NCBI RefSeq assembly: GCF_002113885.1
Contig: NW_018404383.1
Location: forward strand, 66,965 to 130,964
Direction of reading: 5' to 3'
DNA: 64,000 nucleotides
Origin: Mizuhopecten yessoensis
Lineage: Eukaryota
The notes under the pieces were generated by a model. That model did not search any database and had not been told where the DNA came from. It was given only the letters and a program-made list of their open reading frames with translations. Numbering within the stretch: position 1 is the first letter of the stretch; every line of letters starts with the position of its first letter. A program made the position numbers and the translations under genes. Positions 29,441 through 46,694 of this stretch are shown piece by piece.

Positions 29441-30194
29441 TTGAAGGTTCTGTGGTGTTTATGTAAACAGTTGTACCCGCGGTAATGCTTAGCTAGCTCA
29501 AGTATTTCATGCTTACATGTTTAATAGACAAGCACTCGGTGTGTGTCTTTCTATGTCAGTCGTGTGTGGAATCTTCAAAGGTTTATTCTCATAATAATAC
29601 AATCTGCTCCTCGTAAAATGTAAGCGAGGACGGATGTAAATATCATTATTATTATTTCATCTCAAAACCTGAATGGAATGAAACTTAATGAACTGCGAAA
29701 ATTGTGAAAAATATGTGTACAAACAAGGAATATTCTACAACGTGTATTCTGTATCGGAGGATATATCACTTTATAGTTTTGCAGAAGTATGGTGGTTAGC
29801 TATCGAGGGCAGATAAAAGGATGGACTCGAGGTCCTTTCTTCTGCCGTAGTAAGTGTCTTAAGTGAAGGAAAAGTACTAGACAAGTGAATGGCGATCTTC
29901 GCCCCGTCCCGTAAAGTGATGTTGACAAATCATCACCGTATCTGATTCAGATCAAACAACCCACACAAAACTCTTAAATGGGACTGTTACCAAACACATT
30001 CACAAAAGGTCATAAACCAAGTTCGTTTATAATCCCCAGAAGAAGACTGAGTAGCCCGGTTGTTACATCAAACCATGTGTATACAGTCTGTTCTTGTTTG
30101 GAAACTACATCGTAACAACACGTTTAGTTGGTTTGTTTTCTATTTTGTCGACGGAAATGGTGTTACTATCTTTCAATGATCAGGTGAGATGCAT

Positions 30195-30352
30195 TCAGCC
30201 CCGCCCATCTCTCCCCGTCCCTTTCTTCTAGTATTAAAACGTCGCCATTCTAATCGAAACTCAAAAAAGTGCCACCCAGCCCCGCCCACTTTCGTCCTGT
30301 CCCTGTCCCCAGCCATTATTACATTGTAAATTGCCATTCTCATCGAAACTCT
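30195..30352. repeat. Diverged two-copy tandem duplication (~85-90 bp), each copy with a GC box
   Basis: cagccccgccca...gccattct(a/c)atcgaaactc occurs twice. Confidence 0.7.
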
Positions 30353-33179
30353 CGTCTGTTCGGATAAAAGTACACTTTAGTCCTTGCATTAGACATCATA
30401 TCGTCAGTTGATTGAGTGCCGATACATATCAACAGCAAGACACATATTACATTTTTAATCTTTGAAATTGGCCAGCCCTGAGCATAAAGCCTTCTATGGG
30501 GGAATATCAATGTTTTTTTCTTCACGCTGCTGGCATCTTGTAAGGCGATGATTAAAACCCAAAACAGTTTATGTATATTTAAATGAAAGATGGAATGGCA
30601 GATAAGTCCTAGTACATTATGTCAATTATAGATAGTGAAGCGATTTATGCGGAACGCTTACATCACTGCGAAATTGATTATACCAAACTTTCCCGATTCC
30701 AAAAAAGTAGCGACAACCTGCCGATGAAGTCGTCGATACGAAAAACGTGAATGAAAACAAGATATATTGCCAGCCCTTTAATATATTCGGACATAACCAA
30801 GTAATCGAATCATCTCATTTCTTGTTTAACTGATGAAATCTCGTCAGAAAAAAAAAACATTTTCATTATTAACATATTTTGCAACGCGAAAACGGCGCTG
30901 TTGTAAATGATTTTTGTTATCGACTAGACATGATGTTTTTATGACCGTGACAGTGTAGTTGTATCATGAAGCTGATGTTCATTGCACATGAAACGTATTT
31001 ACTGATATGTATGTTATTTTCGGAAAATAAATTGTTAATGTGATATGAAAATTTGATAAGATCATTTTCTTTATAGGTGCTTGTCCGAAGGATGGTCTTT
31101 TGTTTGAATTTCTAATAAATTAACATTCGTTTTTTGTAAACCGTTAGTTATGTTAGAGTGTATATGTTAACGATGGACTCGGCCAGGGTGGTTTGTTTAC
31201 TGTGAAGTCTGTTGTTTACTGGTTACATTTTGTTGACATTGGGTTCAGTGTGGGTTGTTTTGTATTCACCTCAGGTTCTGGTCACATGCTTTGTTAATCC
31301 TGGCCTCTGTTCGGATGAGTTCTTTTCTGTATTCCTGATCAGTTGGCATGTTTTAATGACAGTAAGATCCGTTCTTACCAATGCATCGTTTCCACAACCA
31401 AGACTTATTTGTCCACGGTTTTCTTGTAAATGGTGTCTCTATCCACACCCCAGGGTGCAGACAACATACTTCGCGATGAAAACAATAAAATGATGTCATC
31501 TTTTATAATCAGAAAACGTCATATTAATGATGGGGTTTTGACGTAGAGAGCATCTACTTTTGTCGTAACAATTTGTTTTAAGGATGGCGGAAAGCCGATT
31601 TCTGCTTTTTCGGGTGAGACAGAAATTGTAACTTGGAATTATTAAGCCGTTTGCAGAACCTCGATATCACAACTGTTCAGAATAGTGCCACTTTGCATGA
31701 GTTTCTTTTTAGTTTCAGCTCATAATCATGTTGTTCCTGGATTGACTACAACATCTAAATTTGTATATCATCATAATCTTTTTATCATTCAGTCTTGCTT
31801 ACTTTAGGTATAATTAGTTTCTGACTCTTGTTAAACTATATGATGCATGAATCTAAATCGCTTTTTTCACAAGGGGGCTTCAATACTTGATTTCGGACGC
31901 CTGCAACAAATAATGAAACTCAGTTCGAAGACTAACGAACGTACTTCTTAATTCGTTTGGCCCTGAATTAATTCATTGAAAGCGATCATCCGAATAATAG
32001 TGACCTTTCTGTTGTATGATTCACGATGCAACTAAAGCGATGCTGTATTACTGCAATTAACACTTGATGGGTTTAATGGTACTGTATTCAAGATGATGCA
32101 GATAAGAAAATGAATTTTACTCAATAAATCTGTTGGAATTATTGTATTATACTGTTCATCCAGAAATGTTTGCCAGATTCTCAATTTCGCCCTTGTCGCC
32201 TTTTCTAATCGGGTTGAATTTTGGGTAGCATGCGGACGGACAACAATGCTCTGTCTGCTAGACCCATTGTATTTCTCATGTGAAGGATGAAAATAACACC
32301 GGACTAGTTCGTATTTTATCCGCCGAAATTGATAATATATTACAGGACTCAACTGTTCCAGTATACAGTATTACAATAAAATGTGGCGACAAGTGATATG
32401 CCATAAGTCTTTTAAGTTACACCATATTCCCATTGGTTCTATGTTGATTTGCTTTTTTCACAAAGTTATCTCGACTTTTTTCCGATGAATTTTGAAGAAA
32501 TTTGGCACACACCTAGACAATTATGTTCGTGATGTTAATATACTACCAGTTCATTGGTCAAAATGATTTCACGGCGAAATCTAGAATTGCGTTTATGTAT
32601 CAACGCCAAAAGGATCTTTCATGCACGGGTGAAAAATGATATCTTAGTAATAACGACAAATTTAATTATATCAATATTACGAATAGAAGCAAGTTGCAAA
32701 ATTCTCAAGTTATGTACTAAATTATATCGCAATGTGATGATAAAAAACCTATAAGCATCAAAGGGGAGCAAAACATTAGCATATTTTGATAACTTATCAA
32801 AGTTATAAATACTGCATTGTATTTGTTGATGGAGAAATGCCGAATTACCGTAGCTCTTCAGTTAACAAGGCTTTTTGAGTTTATTCAGTTTGTGTAACTG
32901 TTATCTGAGTAAGTCCAACGTCATCTGACTTGTCTAAAGATTTAGGCAGACCTCCAATATCTCAGCCATATATACCAGTTCGAGATTTTACAAATACGTT
33001 AAGTTAAACTCTTTTTTTTCTCCTTACTGTCCATCAAAACTGAGGTCGGAATTGCAAATGTTTGGTTTGTTAGTCGGATTGCCCATGCATTGCTCTATTC
33101 TGCCTATGGACTTAACCACACTCTGTAATAATATTTCCAGGAATTATCATTCTGCTCTGAACGCACATTAAAAACATTG

Positions 33180-33250
33180 AGACATATAATTTTTTTCAGT
33201 GTTTTTTATATTATATTTTATGTTTTGTAGAAATTTTACAATAATTTAAA
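33180..33250 (-). other. Possible 3' end / polyadenylation region of the trunk-like mRNA (~1 kb 3' UTR)
   Basis: A-rich block on the minus strand with only variant hexamers (CATAAA, AATATA, TATAAA); no canonical AATAAA. Confidence 0.25.
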
Positions 33251-33866
33251 TAGTCATAACAAATACCACTTTCATAACGATAACACAGCTCTCACCCAAA
33301 CAGACGCATACATACAATGAACAACACTCTACCACGCCGCGCACCAGCATGCACGTGCTGCTGCCAGCCCGAAATGTTCTACTCACTATGGCAAATATCA
33401 ACTACAATGGTTCGTAAAGCCATTTGTGTCGTCTCGTCAGTGTCCAGTGTTTTTTTCTTAAACTTCCTTAAATGACTGGTAGCGTTAAACTAAAAAGTTT
33501 GGAAAGACCATGTTGTCTTTCCGCGTTGGATTGTGTTTCTGTCTTTAGCGTGCTTAAATGTATATCGGACGAATAACTCGCCCAGACGTGCACACAAGAC
33601 GGACACCAGCGTCCGTTACTGAACACATAAATCTACCTTGGTACTGCTAGCACGAAATGCCTGTGGATTTCTGGGAGACGCTGCCTCCCGCGCACACTTG
33701 TCATGCTTTTTGCTTGAATGTCCGCCGCCACGGAGCCTTGTGTTACAGGGAATGTTGACAGTACTGGCAGTACGCTCATCCAATAACAACAATAAATGCA
33801 GTATTATAATATTCATAATTAATAATATATCACAACACATAAGCACGGGTCTGTGTCTTTAGATCA

Positions 33867-33928
33867 TTGCACGCATCCTTATCACGACACCGCCCGTGCA
33901 CAAGTCCTGTCTCGACGGGCGGTCTATA
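33867..33928 (+). repeat. 62-bp inverted repeat, copy A (downstream of the trunk-like stop codon)
   Basis: ttgcacgcatccttatcacgacaccgcccgtgcacaagtcctgtctcgacgggcggtctata is the reverse complement of 36402-36463 with 3 substitutions. Confidence 0.95.
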
Positions 33929-34197
33929 TTTACTGGCTACACAACGTCGTCCCCTCCCCCCATCCCCGGCCCCCACTGGATTTCATAACATATGTAATAA
34001 ATATATGGACTCTGGGTAGTACACATAGGCCGCAGAGTCAGCCAGGCCTGTCCTTAGTAGCAACAGGTGGAATGGAACCTCCTTCGAGAGAAATATCTCT
34101 GCTAAAAGTAATCCATTGGGTTGCGGCACCATTGTATCACAGTTGGCGCATGCGCAAGAACACGTCACTGTCACGGAAAATCCCTAGTTTATAAATA

Positions 34198-35124
34198 TCA
34201 CACGTCCCTCGGCCGTCTCCGTCGGTTTTTCCGCTTACGTTTGTTTTTAGGATTGCCACATTCGCACCAAACGTTAACATGTAGTTTCTCGAACACCCAA
34301 ACCTCCTCATACGTCGTGTTGACCCCCACTGTAGGGACCGGGTTACAACGATTAGGGTCCATCTTAAACAAGTTGATTGTGTATCCCTGCTCAACGCATT
34401 CGTTTAACTTATAATAACACAATTTTGTTAAACATTCCACGGAATTATAATACTTGGGAAAATACCCTGGTTTAGTTTTATTCCATATCTTTTTCATCTT
34501 ACACTTCCATGACAAGTGGTCTTTCCTTTTAAGTTTTTGTTTTTGTTTTCGCCTCCTTCCACTGCGGGGGCCCGCTCGCTTATGTCTTACATTTAATTGC
34601 ATTAATCTTTGGTAAAATGTCACATCCTCGTCGAAATCGTCATCGTCATCGTCCTCCTCCTCCTCCTCAACAACCGCTCGTCGTTTTCTCTTCCTCATGA
34701 ATTTCATAGAATCTAAATACGCAGAGTCCTGCGTTTGAACCGTTCTGTCTTGTGAGTTTCCATAACCACCATCACTCATCATTGTGTTCGAAATCGAATC
34801 AATATTCGAGTCGAAATCATCCACAGAATCATCGAATTCATCATCATCATCGTTCTCGAAATCATCGTCGTCCTCTATAGAACGCTCTCGTAACGTGCTT
34901 CTTTTCATATCCTCCTCGTCCATTGCCATCCTCGACTCGTCGTAGTGTCTGCCCATTCGGTAGCGCAGATGATCTGGGTCGACAGGACGACAACGGGGCA
35001 CGGTTATTTCCGTGATGTTATTGAGCTTGGTTGGCGGCGGGCGTTTTCTCGGGTAGGCCAACACGGGGCTTGTCAGCATCACAAAACAGATCACGAGGAA
35101 CAGAAACTCGCTGGTTCTCTTTGC
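34198..35124 (-). CDS. trk: Trunk-like (Trunk/PTTH/Noggin superfamily) secreted cystine-knot ligand, main coding exon (308 aa + stop)
   Basis: Hydrophobic signal segment FLFLVICFVMLTSPVLA. N-terminal motif CRPVDPDHLRYRMGRHYDESRMA matches the Trunk/Noggin C-x-L-x-LG-x-F-x-YMS helix motif. The C-terminal domain WKCKMKKIW..GYFPKYYNSVEC..KLCYY..NEC..YTINLFK..C..YEEVWVFEKLHVNVWCEC follows the insect Trunk pattern (WxC, YFPRYxxSxEC, CWY, WxxE, CEC). Furin-type sites RKRKRR and RHKR. The ORF track gives 34198..35160, but the first 12 codons read as an intron 3' end (cttctctcctgtttgctgttgcag|GCA). Confidence 0.9.
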   Translation of the reverse strand, partial: AKRTSEFLFLVICFVMLTSPVLAYPRKRPPPTKLNNITEITVPRCRPVDPDHLRYRMGRHYDESRMAMDEEDMKRSTLRERSIEDDDDFENDDDDEFDDSVDDFDSNIDSISNTMMSDGGYGNSQDRTVQTQDSAYLDSMKFMRKRKRRAVVEEEEEDDDDDDFDEDVTFYQRLMQLNVRHKRAGPRSGRRRKQKQKLKRKDHLSWKCKMKKIWNKTKPGYFPKYYNSVECLTKLCYYKLNECVEQGYTINLFKMDPNRCNPVPTVGVNTTYEEVWVFEKLHVNVWCECGNPKNKRKRKNRRRRPRDV

Positions 35125-36401
35125 CTGCAACAGCAAACAGGAGAGAAGACATTTAATCATTGTGGATCATTTGAAATATAACAATGTATAAAGAAAAAGA
35201 ATCATAGATGGTTCCATTGGTGTTTACCTCATAAAGATTGGTTTCTTGAGTCGGACAAGAGTGGGTGTGTTCCTTATTGCGAAGCAGTAAGTACAGAAAC
35301 AACGACACGCCTATTTGGATAGTATTTGTATTAGCTAAACTCAATCACATGCTTACGATAAGGCCAAGAGTTTACATGATTGCGATACGGTCATACTGGG
35401 GTGACGATTGAGCTAATTTAGCAAATACGAAACACGAGGCATAGCTTTGATTAACACTATAATGCATTTTGAGACAACAACAAACCAATTCCTTCGTTTT
35501 CGATCTGATCTTCATGCGAATGAAAATAAGTCAACTGGTAGGACCACTCACACTTTAAGGCAAACTAGTACAGAGTGTATCTAAAAGCTGCTGGTCTTGT
35601 CAAGAACAACCATATGCCATCACTATTGTAGAAAATAGAAATGACAAGATGAAGTTGATATCTGCAATTCACTGTTTTCGCTAAAGTATTGGATAGAGTA
35701 GGGACGTGCTGTGTGTCGCATCAACTTCAACTTTCTGATAAATTATCATGAATATCGGCGCGCTCTTGATGTCTCTATCAGATCAAACTCTCTTGTCAAA
35801 GGTCACCTCGTACCAAATTCACAAGATATGTTACAACAGTTGCTTGTTGTTCTCCGTTTATTTTCTAATTTGTATACATAATGTTTGTATAAGATCATTT
35901 CTACTTATTTGAATGGAATAGCAGTGATAAGGGTAATAAATCCATGATCAATTAATATGACGTTACATTACAGATGGTTGTGTAGGAGGTGTGCGACAGC
36001 TTTCATCGTTATGTTCACATTTTCTTATTCAGGTTAGCGGATTTTGGCTAAAAAAAAGTCCGAATGTTGTCTTTTTTTCCAATTCGATTTAAAACTTTGA
36101 TTCTATATAATAAATGTGATGTAAGAAACATGTCATCTTCTAAACTACATCACAACATAAACAATATACATCCAATAATTATTTAATTGATAACGTTTGC
36201 AACATTACGCTGATAACTGACTTTCAAAATAATTTGTAAGCTTTCATATTGAAAAATAAGCAAGTTTCAGTTTAAAGCAGCTCAGATTAATACGATTCAC
36301 GTCACATTTAACGAATCACCTTACCCATCCCCAACTATGTCAAATGGTATAAAGGTTGTACAGGATGCAATATGCACACATATTCGTCACAGGGATGTTG
36401 T

Positions 36402-36463
36402 TATAGACTGCCCGTCGAGACAGGACTTGTGCACGGGCGGTGTTGTAATAAGGATGCGTGCAA
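36402..36463 (-). repeat. 62-bp inverted repeat, copy B (in the predicted intron)
   Basis: tatagactgcccgtcgagacaggacttgtgcacgggcggtgttgtaataaggatgcgtgcaa; 59/62 identical to the reverse complement of copy A. Confidence 0.95.
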
Positions 36464-39400
36464 ATGTTCGGTTTCTGTTTTATCTTTAAATGTTCAATAG
36501 GTTATCATAATATCGTCAGATACTACTATAGTAGTATGCACATTCAGTTCGGCAGAACTCGTGTACGACAATGGCTTTTAGTGTAACATGTGTACAAATG
36601 TTTGCAAGATATTATCCGGAATCGACCAATATATGCTAGTAGGTTAACATACATATTCGTTCCGCGTTTTTTTATTCTGCTCGAATTTTAGGATTTTCAT
36701 ATCCGTTTCATTACCCAAATAATCTTAAAAGGCGTGAAAAGTCATGCAATCAAGATTAATTGATTAACACCACCCAAAACTGCAGAAATTGCGAAATAGT
36801 CAGTATATGTACACTTGTGTAATATACGAACACAAGAATACATCTGTGTAATATTATATGAAAACGTTTTAAAGGGACAAATCATGATCACTCCAAGAAC
36901 ATATTTGCGAAAAAGATTTCAACTGAAAGAAAATAGTTTCAGAGTGTTGTATTTTGGAAATATGATTCCATATTTCTTAGTATACGTGTTTTCTTAGCCA
37001 AGTTGATAATTCGTGTCCCCCTATACAAACGTTGGTTAAATGACAGAATTCTCAATAAACTGATTCGTACGTGTATGATATCTGTCAAATATACCTTTGA
37101 AACTGTGGCGTTCCAGGTATTATTGTAAAGAATGTCGAGATTATTTTGCATGAGCGGAAAATGAAACGACTGAAAATGTGGTGAATACGTGATCACACTC
37201 CAAAGATCGTCTCTAGTGCCTCAAGGAGAAAACACATTAACTTCGACTACGACTTAGTATCACTTGAGTTCAGCTGTGCGTGTAGAACGATCGGCATGTT
37301 TGAAAAAACGGCCGGAACACTGATAGAAAATGTTACTATCCACACGTATTATACGGTTCGAAGACTTAAAACAATTACTTAAATTTAATTCTTAATTTGT
37401 TTAACGAGGATTACGAACAGCCCAGGGGCTACTAGCCTACTAACTCTTCACACGTATTCAACTGATATGCAACTGCTGACTGATAAAACGCGGGTTGGAT
37501 ACATTTCAAAATTAGAGAAAAACATTACCGAAAACTGATTCCAAACACTCATAACTTAAAAATAGATATGAATATCCTAAAAATGTCAGAGAATGTTAAT
37601 TCCTGGTGTAAGTACCTGTGCACCGTCGTGCGGTTACAACGGTTTCATACCAGTCAATGTTTACCAACCTTTAACGTGCGGAATTCAAAAGCTAGGTAAA
37701 TATGAAATATATGACAGGTGAAACTCATGTTTTAATTGATTTATACACATTTTTATTTATATTTTACATCTAATTATTGACTTTTTGAGATGTTTTGTTT
37801 GTCACTTGATGTAGGAACTTCCATTCCATTACAACGACCCCTTGAACCAGATTCATATTGATATCCCACCTTTGCAGGTTGTGGCGACTACGACCAACAC
37901 ATCCCAGTGGGGGTGAGAAGGGAGGACTTCAAAACTCTTTATGTAGTATTGATACTCCAAGCTCCTGTAGAAACTTAACTAAATCTTAGTTGACATTCAT
38001 GGTAAGCCTTTCTTGGATGCACCCAATTGAGTATTTTCTGACTCCCGGGGAACTGTTAAAATATCCCATCGATATTCAGGGAACGCCTCTCTAAGTAGCG
38101 CCCACTAGCACGGAAACTGGTACAATTTTACCCTCGACACTCATAGGACATTCAGAGAACACCTCTGTATGATGTACTAAGTAGTATGGTCTGACCCCGG
38201 GGACACTTATAAATTCTTACTCGACATTCCCACTATCATCATCAAGTATTACCGGACGCCTGGACCGGAATACGATAACATTATTAGTCATTCAAGCAGA
38301 TAATATATACATGCAGAAAACAGTTCGATAAAGTCTGATGGCAGTGCATGTGTAGCACGGTGACGTCAGCTAAAGAGCATGATCTAATCAAGCTAGTATC
38401 TAATGGTATTGTCACAACAGTAGACGACGTCATCAACAAAACAATGAAATGGTAGGAAAATATGGTTTTATACGAATATTAATATAATAACGATTTTATA
38501 TTTATAAATATCAACCACTTAACTTAAAAAGATTGTTTTTGATTTGACATGGTGAAGTTTGATCTGTATCTATATCAATATCTTAGTCTTTATCAAATCA
38601 TCGATTTTTGGGGAATGTAAATTTTCGATTATTCACATTGAGAAAGAAGTTTTTTTAGAATATAATAGTTGTAAGTACAGTTGTACTTTAGAAATAAGAG
38701 GACAACAGAAAATATTATAAAATATTACCCAAGTGGCGTTACCGTTAAGTTTCCCGTGTTTCCCATGTCTGTCCATTCGTCCAGTTATAAATTGACACTG
38801 ACATTGTTTTATAATACTACTCGCACGAGACCGTTCTCTTATGTGTCGAGAATCTCCAGCAGGTTGTCTATTTATCTCACGATTTGACTGTGGTCTGAAG
38901 TACTTTAAATACGCCCCCTAATCTGTCGTAACTCAATGTAATATAAAAATAAGTATGCGTCATCACGTTAAAAAGAAGGTTTCCCCAGCATACTTCAAAT
39001 TCTCGGTTAAAGACAAGATGTCAATACAATCCCATATATAGCCTGGAGTGTTTGTAGTGACTTCGCTAAAAAAAGCTTCCGAAACCAGCGAGCAACTCCG
39101 ATAAAAGGGTTTATTTAAATTTGGGTGTTGGCCGTTTCAATTAAAGCGATATATGTGAAGGGTACTCCACGCTATTTAACGTACGGAATGCTATTTTCTA
39201 TTTTACCGTTATAATTGTTCATGTGACTAAATCCGCATGTCAAATTTCAGATTTCATCAGCTTTCAAAATATCAGAACAGTGGGTTCAAGCGTGTGATAC
39301 AGTCGGATTGGCGTACTTTAATAACACCTGGATTAACCTATGAATCAGTTAAAATGTGTTCTTAAGAGTTACAGGCAGGTGAAATTACACACAGTCTGAC

Positions 39401-39759
39401 AAATACAGTTTGCGTGAAAAATCCCAGTGTTTTGAGAATAATTCAAACGTATCAGAAACACATGCATCATTATAGGCCCGTTGTTCTACCGAGGTGAGAT
39501 TTTGAATCATACGTGATGTTTGTCGACAAAACAGTATCTGATTTCCCGGTGTATAGGGGCCTCGACACCCTTTCTCTGTGACCAATAATAGCGGAATGTA
39601 TTGGGGATCAAATGTTAAATATCATCTCAAATACCCCATCATCATCATAGACCAAGCAAATGTATCCCACTATACATAGCAAAGCAACCTACGGCAAACA
39701 ATGAAACGCTCATACTAAACATTACTAACCGCAAAACCCCAACTGTCGGTAGTTCAAAC

Positions 39760-40617: not shown

Positions 40618-42773
40618 TTTGAAGATGCATTTTAGTGTTAAAACTCTAATGACCGGAGGAACTAAAACATATCTACCGATTCAGTAGGGGACCATAACCT
40701 AATGGCAATCGCCCCTTATCATCATTTTGGAGGACTTGCAACAATGTCGTAGTTCAGTTTAATTTATCAAAGCCAACAGAAATGAGCATTAAACGCTATG
40801 ACCAAAAGCCAACACTAAAACTAACTGTCGTACATCCAGCTATATATTCTACAATCTAAGTTTACATACACCATTCACTCCCATATGTATCCCTTACATG
40901 AACTCACCCAATCACTGTTTTACACTCCATTCACTTATTTACAGTGTTTAACCTACTGTTCCACTCCTAACAACATGTATACATCTACCCTTTGTTATGG
41001 ACTAACCATCGATCAATGAATCAGAATGATTGCTCAAAGATAAGTTACTTGTAGTCTATAGTGACCTAAAAAACGGCCCATCACCACACAAAAAGGTGTA
41101 CACGTATAGTACACACAGAATGAGTGCCATTATAAAGTATCTATGCATAGTTGGATCAATGAAATACCACAATTTGGGCATGGTGGGCATGAAAGTATCA
41201 GTCTGCTGTAAAAGACTGCAAGGCAACAAGAAGTTTCAAAGGGAGAAAAAGCAGATATAAAAAAACAAGAGATGTGCGAAGTTGCAGACCCCCAAATATT
41301 GCAAGGAGAACAGCATATCAGTATTGGTCCCTTTGGTATACCAAATAAAGGGAAAATAAAGAAAATACTAGAAACTCGTAGAAAATTCCCCATTACAGTG
41401 CCCGAAGTACAAGTCAAAGATAATACATATGTTATTCATGTGTTCAACACAAACCCCCTCATAGTAAGTCGGCAATGAATAACTGGTATAATATGTTTCA
41501 CGAACATTCCTTTTCTTAATGAAATTCTTTAATTTTACGACTGCCAAGAAGCTAAGAAATTAAATGATACATTGCTAAAATTAATGAAAACTTTTTTTTC
41601 TAAACCCTATTTAAACTTGTCTATAAAAAAAGTTCATTGTTGTCATTATGAGTTAATGAACGACCATAAAACTTGGGCCAGCAAACCAAGACTAGACCCA
41701 GACTAATATCTCTGAACGTGTTAGAGGGACGGCAGTGAACACTGCAAATGTTACCCATCTCAGTTAACTAACTCTAAGCGGGAAGGAGTTTAGAATTGTG
41801 TTTACCCATATATTTTTCGTTTTGCGGTTGCAAATCATCATTATTACTGAAGAGATTTTTAAAAATTATTTTCTAAATTTTATGTACACATGTTGTGGGA
41901 TAGAAAAATAATAGGATATGTTGTGGGATAGAAAAAGTAGGATTTGCGGATTACATTAGATCTACCTTGGTGGACAATCAGTTAAATGATGACCGTTGTC
42001 ATCTGACCTTAGCTGTTACAGAACGTGAACCTAAGCAGTGAAACTGTTGCCGTCTGCCAAGATTAACAAAACATGTGCTTATCTCAATCTCGGGATTAGA
42101 ACAACAACCTTTTGTCGATAAAACTGACACTGAAATCACGAAACCATACTCTAAATACCCCGAACATGGAATCATTGTCACCAAACCATCGCTGCAACGA
42201 TAGTCTTTTGGTACAAATGATGTTTGCATAGAATTTGTCCCATTTGAAAATTGCTTTGTCGTAGCAATTGGCCTACTGAGGGTAAAGAAGAAAAACAATA
42301 GTGAACACATGAAGAGAAAAAATACCACAACGTTGACAAACGAACACAAAATTTACCCCTGAGTTAACGCACCAGGACAGAATATACCACAGCGTTACAG
42401 GTGCGGTCAAAATTGGAAATTCAAAAACCAGACAATAGAAACAACAAGAGTAACAGAGGAGACACCAAAATAAAGGCAGAACAACATGAACTTTCATAAT
42501 GAACGAAAACCGATAGCAGTGGTTCAGGAATGATAAGCATAAGCTACACCTAACGGACATCTTAAAGTCATATCGTAGTCTCGACGATATCGAGCTTGAG
42601 GGGAACGACCGTGTCTCTGCAAAAAATGAATAAATCTTACAAATGGCTCTGACATATGAAGCTAGTTAAACTTTTATCTGCCCGCTTGGACAAGTTAAAA
42701 AGTATGCAGGCTGAAAGTCGTTATTGTTCTTTAGTATAACACCTATGATTTTACATCGTAGGGCAATACGTAC

Positions 42774-42869
42774 CTGTGTCACAATCAAAGGAGAAAACAT
42801 TTCACGACCATTGGAACAGTAACAAGGACTTCTCACAACTGTGTTGGTTAGCAGTCTATGTGGAATCAT
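42774..42869 (-). CDS. Predicted first coding exon of the trunk-like gene (MIPHRLL...MFSPLIVTQ; alternative in-frame ATG at 42800)
   Basis: Donor CAG|GTACGT at 42774/42773 is phase 0, matching the phase-0 acceptor at 35124. Splicing gives (M..)MFSPLIVTQ-AKRTSEFLFLVICFVMLTSPVLA. It lies ~300 nt downstream of a TATA/Inr pair in a GC-richer, repeat-free stretch. Predicted intron 35125..42773 (7649 bp). Confidence 0.6.
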
Positions 42870-43152
42870 ATCAGGTAGCGCAAGAGCGCCGGGGTGTCGG
42901 CTCGCCGGTCTCACCCACGGGAAGCGCGGCCATCACCCCAGGGACACACAGTCTCCCTAGCTCGTATTTAATAAAACAAATAATAATTCCCAAAATCTGG
43001 TTATATATCACAAAATAATGATAACTGGTATAATCCCGAATATACTACGAGTCACATCTAGGCGCGTGTTTCGTTCCTCCGTTCGGAAGACCACGGGACG
43101 CCGTGGCTCTCTCTCTCATTTACGTTGTACACTTCGGCAATCCTCGGCTCAC

Positions 43153-43187
43153 AGTAATGATCCAACACTGAATTATAACTTATATAT
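43153..43187 (-). promoter_or_regulatory. Core promoter of the trunk-like gene: TATATAAG (43186-43179) and Inr-like TCATTAC (+1 near 43158)
   Basis: Minus strand reads ggaTATATAAGttataattcagtgttggaTCATTACtg. The TATA to Inr A spacing is 28 nt, and the orientation matches the gene. Confidence 0.55.
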
Positions 43188-43744
43188 CCTCGGAAATAAA
43201 AATTCCATTTCAGAATTAATCCCTTTCTATTGTCACAGCCTTGAACGTCCGTGAGGTCCTTACTACGCCACCCACGCGCGTTCTGCAGGACAACCGCAAA
43301 ATCGATGTCATACACGTGCAGTGTACTTGGTCATATCTGGAAAATATCAAACACAATTTCTTGATAAAAATTTGAAACAAAAGTAATATGCATACATATT
43401 TTACCAAATTGTTTTTATATTGAAAAGGTTATCTATGTAATTTGTTTTTTGTAGAAAGAAATGTCTTTATCTTAGATTTAATAGAAGTCTTGTGAAACTA
43501 TCAGGCAAGTCGGCGTACATGTGAAGCCAACTTATGATGAGTGCAAAATAAGTCCCGACAAAGCTATGTGCAATAATCAAGCAAAGAATCCATGTACTTT
43601 GTGAAAGTATTATGGCCAAAGAGTGTCCGCCAAGTCCATGACAGTTTGGAGATGTTTTTCGCTAGATAGGATTTGACCAGATACCCAGTGTCGACAGGTC
43701 TGACCACATCGGGGAGGGAGTAAACACACATACATAGCGTCCTG

Positions 43745-43764
43745 TGACTCATAAAGCTTATATA
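43745..43764 (-). promoter_or_regulatory. Second TATATAAG box with adjacent AP-1 site (TGACTCA); possible alternative promoter or proximal element
   Basis: TATATAAG at 43764-43757 on the minus strand and TGACTCA at 43745-43751. No convincing Inr at the expected spacing. Confidence 0.3.
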
Positions 43765-44513
43765 TAGGAGTGAAACAGTTCATCAGCATATCACGGAAAA
43801 TCGATGTTCATAATCAGCTGTCCACACCTCGTGGCCACGGCCCACGGTTTCCTACTGGTCCGCCCCTCCAGCAAGCCGATCCTGTCTCCTGGGCCACTGT
43901 CTAACTTCAATATCAACTTTTTCCTGTCTGAGCATAAAAGTCTTTTTAAAAGAAAAACATATGTTCTGATAAAGCAACATATGGTTAATCAAACGTGAAC
44001 TCACAGTCTCGAGAAAAATTCGCGCGTTTTTTGTAGATCTGCAATTGTTGCGCAAGTTGGTTGTAACCCGTTTCGGTGTGGACAGACCTCCGTAGAACTA
44101 TACTTGTGGTACACATTCTCCAACATGCTATTTGGCTGGGCAATCATGCGTGATCGTGGTTCTTGTCGCGTGGTATTCACTGAATACAAATTCAGCATTC
44201 CTTAACCGTACATGCATGTATTATCATTCTTATTTTTTTATGTAAATTTTTATACATTTACACTTCTTCATTATTTTGTCTACATTAAGCGTACGTTTAA
44301 AAAAAAATCTTCCGATTATGAAGAATTTGAAGGATATTATCATTAGCATTCAACACGTGCTTAACGCACGCGTGTTTGTGTGCGTTTATTATGTATTGTC
44401 ACACACTCTTGCCGCATGGTCGGGCCTTCCCACGTTTAGTCGCGATTATAGCATAGCGCGAGACGCAGAGTTTAAGGTAACTTACAAGTTTTAATTAAAG
44501 GGGACAGAGACCA

Positions 44514-44627
44514 CAGGTAAGGCATTTTCACATGTAACAGGTGTATGAGAGAGATCAGCGTACCTGTCCAGGTGACAATGTACGGAGGGAGGGGGTACCC
44601 TAAGTCACCTCAAGTAACACATACCTG
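44514..44627. promoter_or_regulatory. Homotypic CAGGTA/CAGGTG cluster (5 sites); candidate ZEB/Snail-type element
   Basis: Sites at 44514, 44538, 44561 (rc), 44569, 44622 (rc). Confidence 0.5.
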
Positions 44628-46694
44628 GGCTTGATGACGTACGGTTAGAAAATACTTCAAGAGCTCGTCATCGTCTAAAACACCAAACTTTGGTTTCTAA
44701 CGAAAGTTTCAATTCTTTTTTTATATATATTCTCTCGCTGTGTTAGCACAGTGTCTTGGTCCGTCCCTTCCACAAGGGGAGTAAACAGAACCGTAACCAG
44801 CCTATAGATCGCTATGTTAATTACTCAAGGTATGCTGCTTAACACACAAACATATTCTATTCTGAATAAATATTGAAGTTTGATTAAACACGGACTTTTT
44901 CATTCCACAATGCTTCACTTAAAGAACGTGTGGTTTGAGAAATGGGCGTTGAAGTTTTAAAAGTGAAATTCACCTGACTTGTAATTCATCATGGCCATGG
45001 CGACTATAAATAGTAAATACTTGTGCATTTCTTTGAATAAATACTACAATAACACCGATACATACGACAACATATTTCAACAGCGAAAAGGAATTTCTCA
45101 ATTTCCTAAAAGCATATATAAATAATCGACTTTGTGGCGTCAAATAATGCCACAAGGGCATACGGGGAGCCTCCTTTGGGACAGTAGCAAATACAAATGT
45201 AACATAGAGATAAATCCGAATATTGCATTAAAGCGGCTATGATTTACCTGTAAGGTAACTTCACTCTACCTGGCAGTCTGTGTAGATTACATGTCCATCG
45301 ATCGGATTAATGTATATATACATAAATATATATACAATACCCACGGAACACATAGCTGCTTACGAGTTGGTTTCTCAATAACACGTGTACGCCATACAAT
45401 GTACCCCTTGAAACGATGGCCACTCTATCAGTTGTGTTTGTCAATTATCTTCACGTTTGAGTCCAATAACACATTAGCGATACGAGGGGAATAGAGATAC
45501 ATATAAGTTTCTGATTTGATGATGTAGCGAGTATAACCCAATTGTATCCCACTCCCGATAAACAATGCTCGAGCAATTTGTGGGGGGACGGCTGGTGTAT
45601 TTACGATGGTGATTCACTAGTTCCGGGATAGTGTGTCGGACTCCGTCCCGGGTTTGGACAGTCCATCACCGGATGGTGAGTAATACAGAGAAATCAATGG
45701 CGGGTCGGCCCGGGCAGTGCGGGGAGGGGGGAATGACCACACGCCGATTGGACAAATGGAGGGTCTCCCGTTCATCGGAGGTCAAGGGATAAGATGAATC
45801 AAGGGGAAAGTGTCCAGTGTCCACTATATCGAACGTCAACCAAACAAATAGGCGTCTGGTCAATTTTCTCGGGACGAATCCCGCCGTAGATATAGTGGTC
45901 TCGAAGGATTCCAACATCTACATATCCAAATAGAGCATCATACTGTCTCTCAATATGCTCCAATATCAATGATTATAATCTAAGTCCAACCATACCCGGC
46001 AAAACGGATTCGGACCACCTTTCTGTCTTAATACATCTCAGGTCCAACGATATACCCGTCTATACAACCATATTTATTAAAATTTGCTATGCATATATAT
46101 ATATATATATATAATTGTTGCTAGAAGATCTTTGTTTTCGACATTGATACAGCTGAAGTTCAGCCATTCTCTTCGATGAACTGAATATACATATATTAAA
46201 CTACCTCATTGATAAAACTAAAGAATATGTATTTAACCATCCACAAAAGCAACTAAATTATATCAAAACATTCCACAAAAGCAACTTTTGTTTCTATCTC
46301 ACCAATCAAACCAACAAAACTAAATTATATCGTATAAAGCGTCCACGAAAATAAATTAAGTGTAGCCATTAAGGCACTATAACTCGACGAAAGAAAGAGT
46401 CATGTGGGTTTTTTTCTTCTATATATTTTTAAGCATGATAAGACTAAGAAAACAATCATGCTCACGAGAACCGAAGGCATTTTTCACAGGCAGTAGGCAC
46501 AGCAGATTAGAAGAGTTAAAAAAAACAGGAATTGTTTAAACAGGTAACATAAACTATTCACACAATACGATACCAGTTTGGATACCATACTCCTACTGGT
46601 GCATTGGAAAATCAGGGATCAACGCACCAACGAATATAAGACATATGATAGGCAACGATATATTTTTAATAATGAAGATGTACAAAAGATAGTT

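What the first reader, a model, noticed from the sequence alone, without database searches (positions are those of the whole stretch)
33867..36463. 62-bp inverted repeat brackets the entire trunk-like coding exon
Seen: 33867-33928 (270 bp past the stop) and 36402-36463 (intron) are reverse complements at 59/62. I noticed no other copy in the window. Each copy also has its own GC-rich hairpin (ccgcccgt..acgggcgg), so local and long-range folds are mutually exclusive. All three differences are transitions, two at CpG. In the pre-mRNA they give one G-U and two A.C pairs, and A.C mismatches are favoured ADAR sites. Inference: possible roles are an intron-3'UTR duplex looping out the 2.5-kb exon (splicing, 3'-end or editing control), the TIRs of an element that captured or inverted the exon, or two chance insertions of a small repeat.
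Basis: partly seen in the sequence, partly recalled or inferred. Interest (0 to 1): 0.7.

Follow-up and report, generated by a model that had tools for sequence, protein, structure and literature searches.

The report
Inverted 3'UTR copy inside scallop intron
In the Yesso scallop, a 62-base piece of a conserved 3'UTR stem-loop of a trunk-like gene has been copied backwards into the gene's own intron 2.5 kb away; it looks like an ordinary, young DNA-repair scar, not a transposon or a shown RNA switch.

Summary
Bases 33867-33928 and 36402-36463 are reverse complements at 59/62, and the genome (988 Mb, Mizuhopecten yessoensis) holds no other copy.

The two arms have different histories. The 3'UTR arm is ancestral: it sits in collinear, conserved sequence in Ylistrum, Pecten and Argopecten. 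It is a conservation peak of a roughly 1-kb 3'UTR (92% identity against 78% for the rest) and forms a conserved 13-bp stem-loop.

The intron arm is found in none of those three gene loci. Unique intron sequence flanks it. It carries all three differences, as derived transitions, two of them at CpG.

It is therefore most likely a young, lineage-specific inverted copy of nearby DNA (a template-switch insertion) placed in the upstream intron. The transposon-TIR and dispersed-repeat readings are refuted, and no inversion has occurred.

An intron-3'UTR duplex in the pre-mRNA is thermodynamically strong (-121 kcal/mol). Nothing else supports a function for it: there is no conservation, every change weakens the pairing, and the RNA contigs show no editing and no unusual joints. 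Only assembled contigs were available, so low-level editing remains untested.

Low interest.

The parts
33867..33928 (-). Ancestral arm: a conserved stem-loop element in the 3'UTR of the trunk-like gene (LOC110445202), 270-331 nt past the stop codon. It is the template of the copy.
   Evidence: It is present in collinear context in Ylistrum (L003 17282-17337), Pecten (L007 21016-21072) and Argopecten (L008 13654-13715) at 93-96% identity. Identity is 92.5% against 78% for the rest of the 3'UTR. The 13-bp hairpin is conserved. RNA contigs cover it (record 9; Argopecten RNA contig L004).
36402..36463 (+). Derived arm: an inverted copy of the 3'UTR element lying in the intron. The mRNA-sense sequence of the element is on the + strand here, so the pre-mRNA carries its antisense.
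   Evidence: 59/62 match to the 3'UTR arm. It is absent from the whole gene plus 6-kb flanks in three other genera. Its flanks are unique in the genome. At all three differences the four 3'UTR sequences agree with each other and the intron copy is the odd one out. DNA contigs of two further individuals hold it unchanged.
33890..33922 (-). GC-rich hairpin core of the 3'UTR element: a 9-bp plus 4-bp stem with a 6-nt loop.
   Evidence: -21.4 kcal/mol; 11 of 13 pairs invariant in four genera, 2 changed on one side only, none compensatory.
34198..35124 (-). Coding part of the last exon (cystine-knot, trunk/noggin-like ligand), stop codon included.
   Evidence: Open reading frame; 100% identity to P0001 residues 17-324; the acceptor site is confirmed by an RNA joint 35123/38728.
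33201..34197 (-). 3'UTR of about 1.0 kb.
   Evidence: RNA contigs of X18 and X19 end at 33201/33202. Conservation with other genera runs to about 33170.
35125..38728 (-). Intron of isoform X2, with GT..AG ends; it contains the copy. The longer intron of isoform X1 (to about 42770) contains it too.
   Evidence: Joint in RNA run X19, skipping 3604 nt, ends CT..AC on the + strand.
38729..38776 (-). Upstream coding exon of isoform X2 (first 16 residues).
   Evidence: Exact match in translation.
42768..42869 (-). First coding exon of isoform X1 (residues 1 to about 32).
   Evidence: tblastn match. The loose end of RNA contigs at 35127 encodes the end of this exon.

Best explanation
The pair is not a symmetric structure. 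It is a template and its copy. The 3'UTR arm is an old, conserved stem-loop element of the trunk-like mRNA. In the lineage leading to Mizuhopecten yessoensis, a 62-nt stretch of it was copied in inverted orientation into the upstream intron, 2.5 kb away. The most likely route is a template switch during replication or break repair (MMBIR/FoSTeS-type or polymerase-theta-type templated insertion). The copy then began to decay neutrally: three transitions, two at CpG, all in the copy. That it brackets the coding exon is a by-product of the short distance between the break and the template. Shown: the identity, the uniqueness, the ancestry of one arm, the absence of the other arm in three genera, the polarity of the changes, and the presence of the copy in three individuals. 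Inferred: the repair mechanism and the neutrality.
For: There are only two copies in 988 Mb. The 3'UTR arm is embedded in an alignment of about 2 kb at 80-85% identity with Ylistrum, Pecten and Argopecten that crosses it without a break. In those loci the intron arm matches only their 3'UTR element, in reverse, and no second copy exists in the gene or 6-kb flanks, even in a short-word search at E=10. The intron copy is closest to the M. yessoensis 3'UTR (59/62, against 85-90% to the other genera) and shares its two private states (TATAG, CGAG). At all three differences the four 3'UTR sequences agree, so the changes are in the copy. The similarity has sharp edges on both sides and the flanks are unique. 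Introns are otherwise unalignable between these genera, so 95% identity implies a copy much younger than the genera, if it is neutral. Independent DNA contigs from two other individuals cross both junctions of the copy, so it is not an assembly artefact. Inverted copies of a nearby template are the signature of MMBIR-type templated insertions (PMC8421209).
Against: No empty-site allele or closely related species was available, so junction microhomology, the direct signature of template switching, cannot be read. M. yessoensis may be the outgroup of the other three genera (my own knowledge of pectinid phylogeny, not tested here). If so, presence/absence alone cannot tell a gain here from a loss there. 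The 2.5-kb distance is larger than the 100 bp used by tools that catalogue such insertions. Neutral decay rests on only three substitutions, and intron CpG is not depleted (o/e about 1).
Confidence: 0.78

Rival explanations
1. Functional long-range RNA duplex. The antisense copy in the intron pairs with the 3'UTR stem-loop in the unspliced pre-mRNA. This would mask the conserved hairpin or create a 62-bp dsRNA that recruits ADAR or Dicer, or delays splicing or 3'-end processing, giving species-specific regulation of the ligand.
For: Both arms are in one transcription unit. The duplex is -121 kcal/mol against -33 for the two local hairpins together, and 59 of 62 nt pair long-range in the minimum-energy fold of the 2.7-kb segment. 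The copied piece is a conserved 3'UTR element. M. yessoensis has 4 ADAR-like gene models (PMC6651903). The copy is present in all three individuals seen.
Against: The pair is absent in three other scallop genera that keep the 3'UTR element, so it is not part of the conserved mechanism. All three substitutions are in the copy and each weakens the pairing (two A.C, one G-U), with none compensatory. RNA contigs show no T>C (A>G on the transcript) in the covered part of the 3'UTR arm and only the canonical splice joint. A terminal exon has no downstream donor for back-splicing.
Confidence: 0.08
2. An ancient inverted pair, present in the common ancestor of scallops, kept alike in M. yessoensis by gene conversion or selection and lost from the intron in the Pecten/Argopecten/Ylistrum branch.
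For: Presence/absence cannot be polarised if M. yessoensis is sister to the other three (inference). The two private states shared by both M. yessoensis arms would also fit gene conversion.
Against: 62 nt with a 34-nt perfect core is very short for recurrent conversion. The edges are sharp and there is no trace of decayed flanking homology. No remnant was found in any of the three other introns. The differences are one-sided, in the copy only.
Confidence: 0.07
3. Terminal inverted repeats of a mobile element, or breakpoints of an inversion, that moved or flipped the exon.
For: Only the geometry: two inverted arms around 2.5 kb.
Against: The orthologous loci are collinear across the left arm on both of its sides. 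No other copies exist in the genome. There is no target-site duplication: the outer flanks read ..agatca and atgttc... The inside is an ordinary host exon and intron with no transposase.
Confidence: 0.02
4. Two members of a dispersed small repeat, or an assembly artefact.
For: The assembly is fragmented (82,659 contigs). A real dispersed repeat of about 55 nt lies 900 nt away, at 37373-37435.
Against: There are exactly two copies genome-wide. Contigs from two independent individuals cross both junctions of the intron copy and reproduce its three diagnostic bases.
Confidence: 0.02

Closest known systems
Templated insertions from template switching (MMBIR/FoSTeS; polymerase-theta-mediated end joining)
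   Same: A short insertion that is an inverted copy of nearby sequence on the same chromosome. The template is left intact, the edges are sharp and no mobile-element features are present (PMC8421209).
   Different: The template is 2.5 kb away rather than within about 100 bp. Junction microhomology cannot be assessed because no empty site is available. It is seen here as a fixed germline change in a scallop, not in yeast or cancer data.
Inverted-repeat pairs (for example inverted Alu pairs) that form dsRNA in pre-mRNAs and drive ADAR editing or circRNA formation
   Same: Two inverted arms in one transcript, with a long, nearly perfect predicted duplex.
   Different: The arms are not transposon copies. 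One arm is a conserved 3'UTR element. The downstream arm is in the terminal exon, so there is no back-splice partner. No editing was seen at contig level.
Inverted duplications at inversion breakpoints (staggered-break model, known from Drosophila; my own knowledge)
   Same: Short inverted duplicates flanking a segment.
   Different: The segment is not inverted relative to three other genera.
MITE / TIR DNA transposon
   Same: Inverted arms of about 60 nt.
   Different: Single locus, no target-site duplication, host gene inside, and one arm ancestral in place.

Membership tests
Templated (template-switch) insertion | The inserted stretch is a copy of sequence nearby on the same chromosome, and the template is still in place | tested here: met
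   59/62 identity to the 3'UTR element 2.5 kb away. The template sits in its conserved, collinear context.
Templated (template-switch) insertion | Inverted orientation relative to the template (MMBIR signature) | tested here: met
   the copy is on the opposite strand.
Templated (template-switch) insertion | The insertion is absent from the ancestral or orthologous site | tested here: inconclusive
   No copy exists anywhere in the gene loci of three genera. The introns are not alignable, so the exact empty site is not seen, and the polarity depends on the phylogeny.
Templated (template-switch) insertion | Microhomology at both junctions | not testable with these tools
   This needs an empty-site allele or a close relative. 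Only a weak ATGTT motif lies near both junctions, offset by 2 nt.
TIR transposon / MITE | Multiple copies in the genome | tested here: not met
   Exactly two arms in 988 Mb.
TIR transposon / MITE | Target-site duplication outside the arms | tested here: not met
   The outer flanks differ.
TIR transposon / MITE | The whole element, both arms and the inside, is an insertion relative to orthologous loci | tested here: not met
   The left arm and the inside (coding exon plus 3'UTR) are collinear with three genera.
dsRNA-forming inverted repeat in a pre-mRNA (ADAR or circRNA type) | Both arms transcribed in one RNA, with a stable predicted duplex | tested here: met
   Gene model and RNA joint; -121 kcal/mol, with 59 of 62 nt paired in the minimum-energy fold. 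Formation in vivo is inferred.
dsRNA-forming inverted repeat in a pre-mRNA (ADAR or circRNA type) | A-to-G clusters in RNA but not DNA, or back-splice joints | tested here: inconclusive
   None was seen in the contigs of two RNA runs, but contigs hide low-level editing and the intron arm is not covered by RNA contigs.
dsRNA-forming inverted repeat in a pre-mRNA (ADAR or circRNA type) | The pairing is conserved or compensated across species | tested here: not met
   The second arm is absent in three genera. The three changes are one-sided and weaken the pairing.

The most novel reading that the evidence does not exclude
The copy was kept because its antisense sequence in the unspliced pre-mRNA masks a conserved 3'UTR stem-loop, or turns it into an ADAR or Dicer substrate. 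That would give M. yessoensis a lineage-specific, splicing-coupled control of a trunk-like developmental ligand, created in one step by a repair accident.
Probability: 0.07. Interest if true: 0.55.

Novelty: new member of a known kind. Interest (0 to 1): 0.22.

Why it matters
This is mostly a clean negative. A striking 'exon-bracketing' inverted repeat turns out to be a small inverted copy of neighbouring DNA, a known class of repair scar, with no sign of mobility or of a conserved RNA role. It is a tidy natural example of how a single template switch can create a potential 62-bp intramolecular dsRNA from a conserved regulatory element. It also points to a conserved stem-loop in the 3'UTR of scallop trunk-like genes that may deserve its own study.

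Tried and rejected
- The TIR/transposon reading is rejected by genome-wide copy number, the lack of a target-site duplication and collinearity with orthologs.
- The dispersed-repeat reading is rejected for the same copy-number reason. The flanks of the intron copy are unique, apart from an unrelated repeat of about 55 nt 900 nt away.
- The inversion reading is rejected by collinearity across the left arm.
- An assembly artefact is rejected by junction-crossing contigs from two other individuals.
- Rfam found no family in 33000-39000 at E up to 1.
- I first thought the copy extended to 36469 because it matched Ylistrum there. I withdrew this once Pecten and Argopecten showed that the Ylistrum state is private.
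- A search for further templated fragments beside the copy found none.
- The 3'UTR contigs of a more distant relative (L005, L006) end before the element, so they are uninformative.
- An exact look-up of P0001 and P0003 found no contigs. The longer isoforms from the cluster lists solved this.
- Earlier-findings searches gave nothing relevant beyond the exon coordinates.
- No raw-read runs were on offer, so editing levels, transcript ends and the orientation of the middle segment could not be measured.

Full report
**What the sequence shows.** Window 33867-33928 and 36402-36463 are reverse complements over 62 nt with three mismatches and 2473 nt between them. Shuffled sequence gives no such match. 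This is the only inverted repeat of 40 nt or more within 10 kb in the 64-kb window. The three differences are transitions, two of them at CpG. In the pre-mRNA they become one G-U and two A.C positions.

**Where we are.** The minus-strand ORF 34198-35160 matches LOC110445202 of Mizuhopecten yessoensis at 100% identity. UniProt names this protein 'Protein trunk'. The assembly statistics also fit that species: 988 Mb in 82,659 contigs. Pfam gives only a sub-threshold Noggin hit.

The gene model is as follows.
- The last exon starts at 35124. An RNA joint 35123/38728 with GT..AG ends on the minus strand confirms this.
- Isoform X2 has its first coding exon at 38776-38729, and isoform X1 at 42869-42768.
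- RNA contigs cover the coding part and the 3'UTR down to 33201/33202, where two runs stop.
- The 3'UTR is therefore about 1.0 kb. The left arm lies inside the mature mRNA, and the right arm lies in the intron of both isoforms.
- The '2.5-kb exon' of the finding is really 1277 nt of intron, 927 nt of coding sequence and 270 nt of 3'UTR.

**Copy number.** BLAST of the arm with its flanks, and pattern searches of each half at up to 3 mismatches, find exactly these two places in the whole genome. The 1.1 kb on either side of the intron arm is unique. The one exception is an unrelated dispersed repeat of about 55 nt at 37373-37435. The arms are therefore not members of a repeat family.

**Orthologous loci.** I fetched the complete gene loci of three other genera: Ylistrum balloti (L003), Pecten maximus (L007) and Argopecten irradians (L008).
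- In all three, one alignment at 80-85% identity runs from the coding exon through the left arm to the end of the 3'UTR without interruption.
- The arm itself is 93-96% identical to that of M. yessoensis.
- The intron arm of M. yessoensis matches these loci only at their 3'UTR element, in reverse orientation.
- A short-word search at E=10 finds no second copy anywhere in the genes or their 6-kb flanks.
- The 3'UTR arm is also present in an Argopecten-type RNA contig (L004).
- The introns are otherwise unalignable between the genera.

**Polarity.** At each of the three differences the four 3'UTR sequences agree and the intron copy differs. All substitutions therefore fell in the copy: two C>T at CpG and one G>A. 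The copy also shares two states private to the M. yessoensis 3'UTR (TATAG and CGAG, where the others have TATAT and CAAG). It is closer to that 3'UTR (59/62) than to any other genus (85-90%). I first took a 6-nt extension of the copy to 36469 as real because it matched Ylistrum. Pecten and Argopecten show that match is a coincidence, so I withdraw it.

**The template is a conserved element.** Across the four genera the arm is 92.5% identical, against 78% for the rest of the 3'UTR and 85% for the coding sequence. This puts it in the top 5.5% of 62-nt windows in the 3'UTR. It folds into a 13-bp stem-loop of -21 to -22 kcal/mol in each species. Eleven pairs are invariant, two change on one side only, and none change on both sides. 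The structure is therefore conserved, but covariation does not prove it. Rfam has no match.

**Other individuals.** Only Logan contigs were on offer. DNA contigs from two independent studies (X1, X6) carry both arms with the same diagnostic bases and cross both junctions of the intron copy. They break at 33916/33891 and 36439/36414, as expected for k=31 unitigs meeting a 34-nt exact shared core. The copy is therefore real and probably fixed. The same breaks mean that contigs cannot tell the orientation of the middle segment. RNA contigs show only the canonical splice joint, an alternative upstream exon and one SNP that is also present in DNA. There is no T>C in the covered part of the 3'UTR arm. 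Low-level editing is invisible in contigs.

**RNA duplex.** The two arms would pair at -121 kcal/mol, against -33 kcal/mol for the two local hairpins together. In the minimum-energy fold of the 2.7-kb pre-mRNA segment, 59 of 62 intron-arm bases pair with the 3'UTR arm. M. yessoensis has ADAR-like genes (PMC6651903). The duplex is physically possible if the intron outlasts transcription of the next 1.2 kb, which is an inference. Nothing else supports a function. The pair is lineage-specific, every change weakens it, and a terminal exon offers no back-splice.

**Verdict.** This is a young, lineage-specific inverted copy of a nearby conserved 3'UTR element inserted into the intron. It has the signature of a template-switch (MMBIR/FoSTeS or polymerase-theta) insertion (PMC8421209).
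- Shown: uniqueness, the ancestry of one arm, absence of the other arm in three genera, one-sided decay, and presence in three individuals.
- Inferred: the repair mechanism and the neutrality of the copy.
- Not resolvable here: junction microhomology, gain versus loss in strict phylogenetic terms, low-level editing and inversion polymorphism.

No steps were left out on safety grounds.

Noticed in passing
window 33201-34197 (minus strand): The 3'UTR of about 1 kb of the trunk-like gene is 78-98% identical across four scallop genera whose introns are unalignable. Conservation peaks lie at 33211-33270 (98%, just upstream of the mRNA 3' end), 34111-34170 (93%), 33781-33840 (91%) and at the stem-loop 33867-33928. 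This suggests heavy post-transcriptional control.
   Followed up: partly
window 37373-37435: A dispersed repeat of about 55-60 nt with at least 40 copies in the genome at 86-96% identity. Depth there jumps 10-fold in every DNA and RNA run, and many loose ends occur at 37382-37435.
   Followed up: partly
window 38722-39634, 42762-45117, 45333-45888: Non-coding blocks around the two alternative first exons are 68-79% identical to Ylistrum, Pecten and Argopecten. They are probably promoters, 5'UTR exons or enhancers of the two isoforms.
   Followed up: no
window 29508-30984: Two blocks downstream of the gene are 74% identical to Ylistrum (L003 19557-20909), and one is also matched in Argopecten. 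They could be a neighbouring gene or a conserved non-coding element.
   Followed up: no
window 33940-33990; L005 1430-1531: A G-rich tract (on the mRNA strand) just upstream of the stem-loop is also present, and expanded, in the 3'UTR of a more distant relative (66% protein identity). That contig ends inside the tract.
   Followed up: no
window 35125-35160: The mechanical ORF starts at an in-frame ATG at 35160, inside the intron. The real exon begins at 35124, so the 320-aa ORF overstates the exon by 12 codons.
   Followed up: yes
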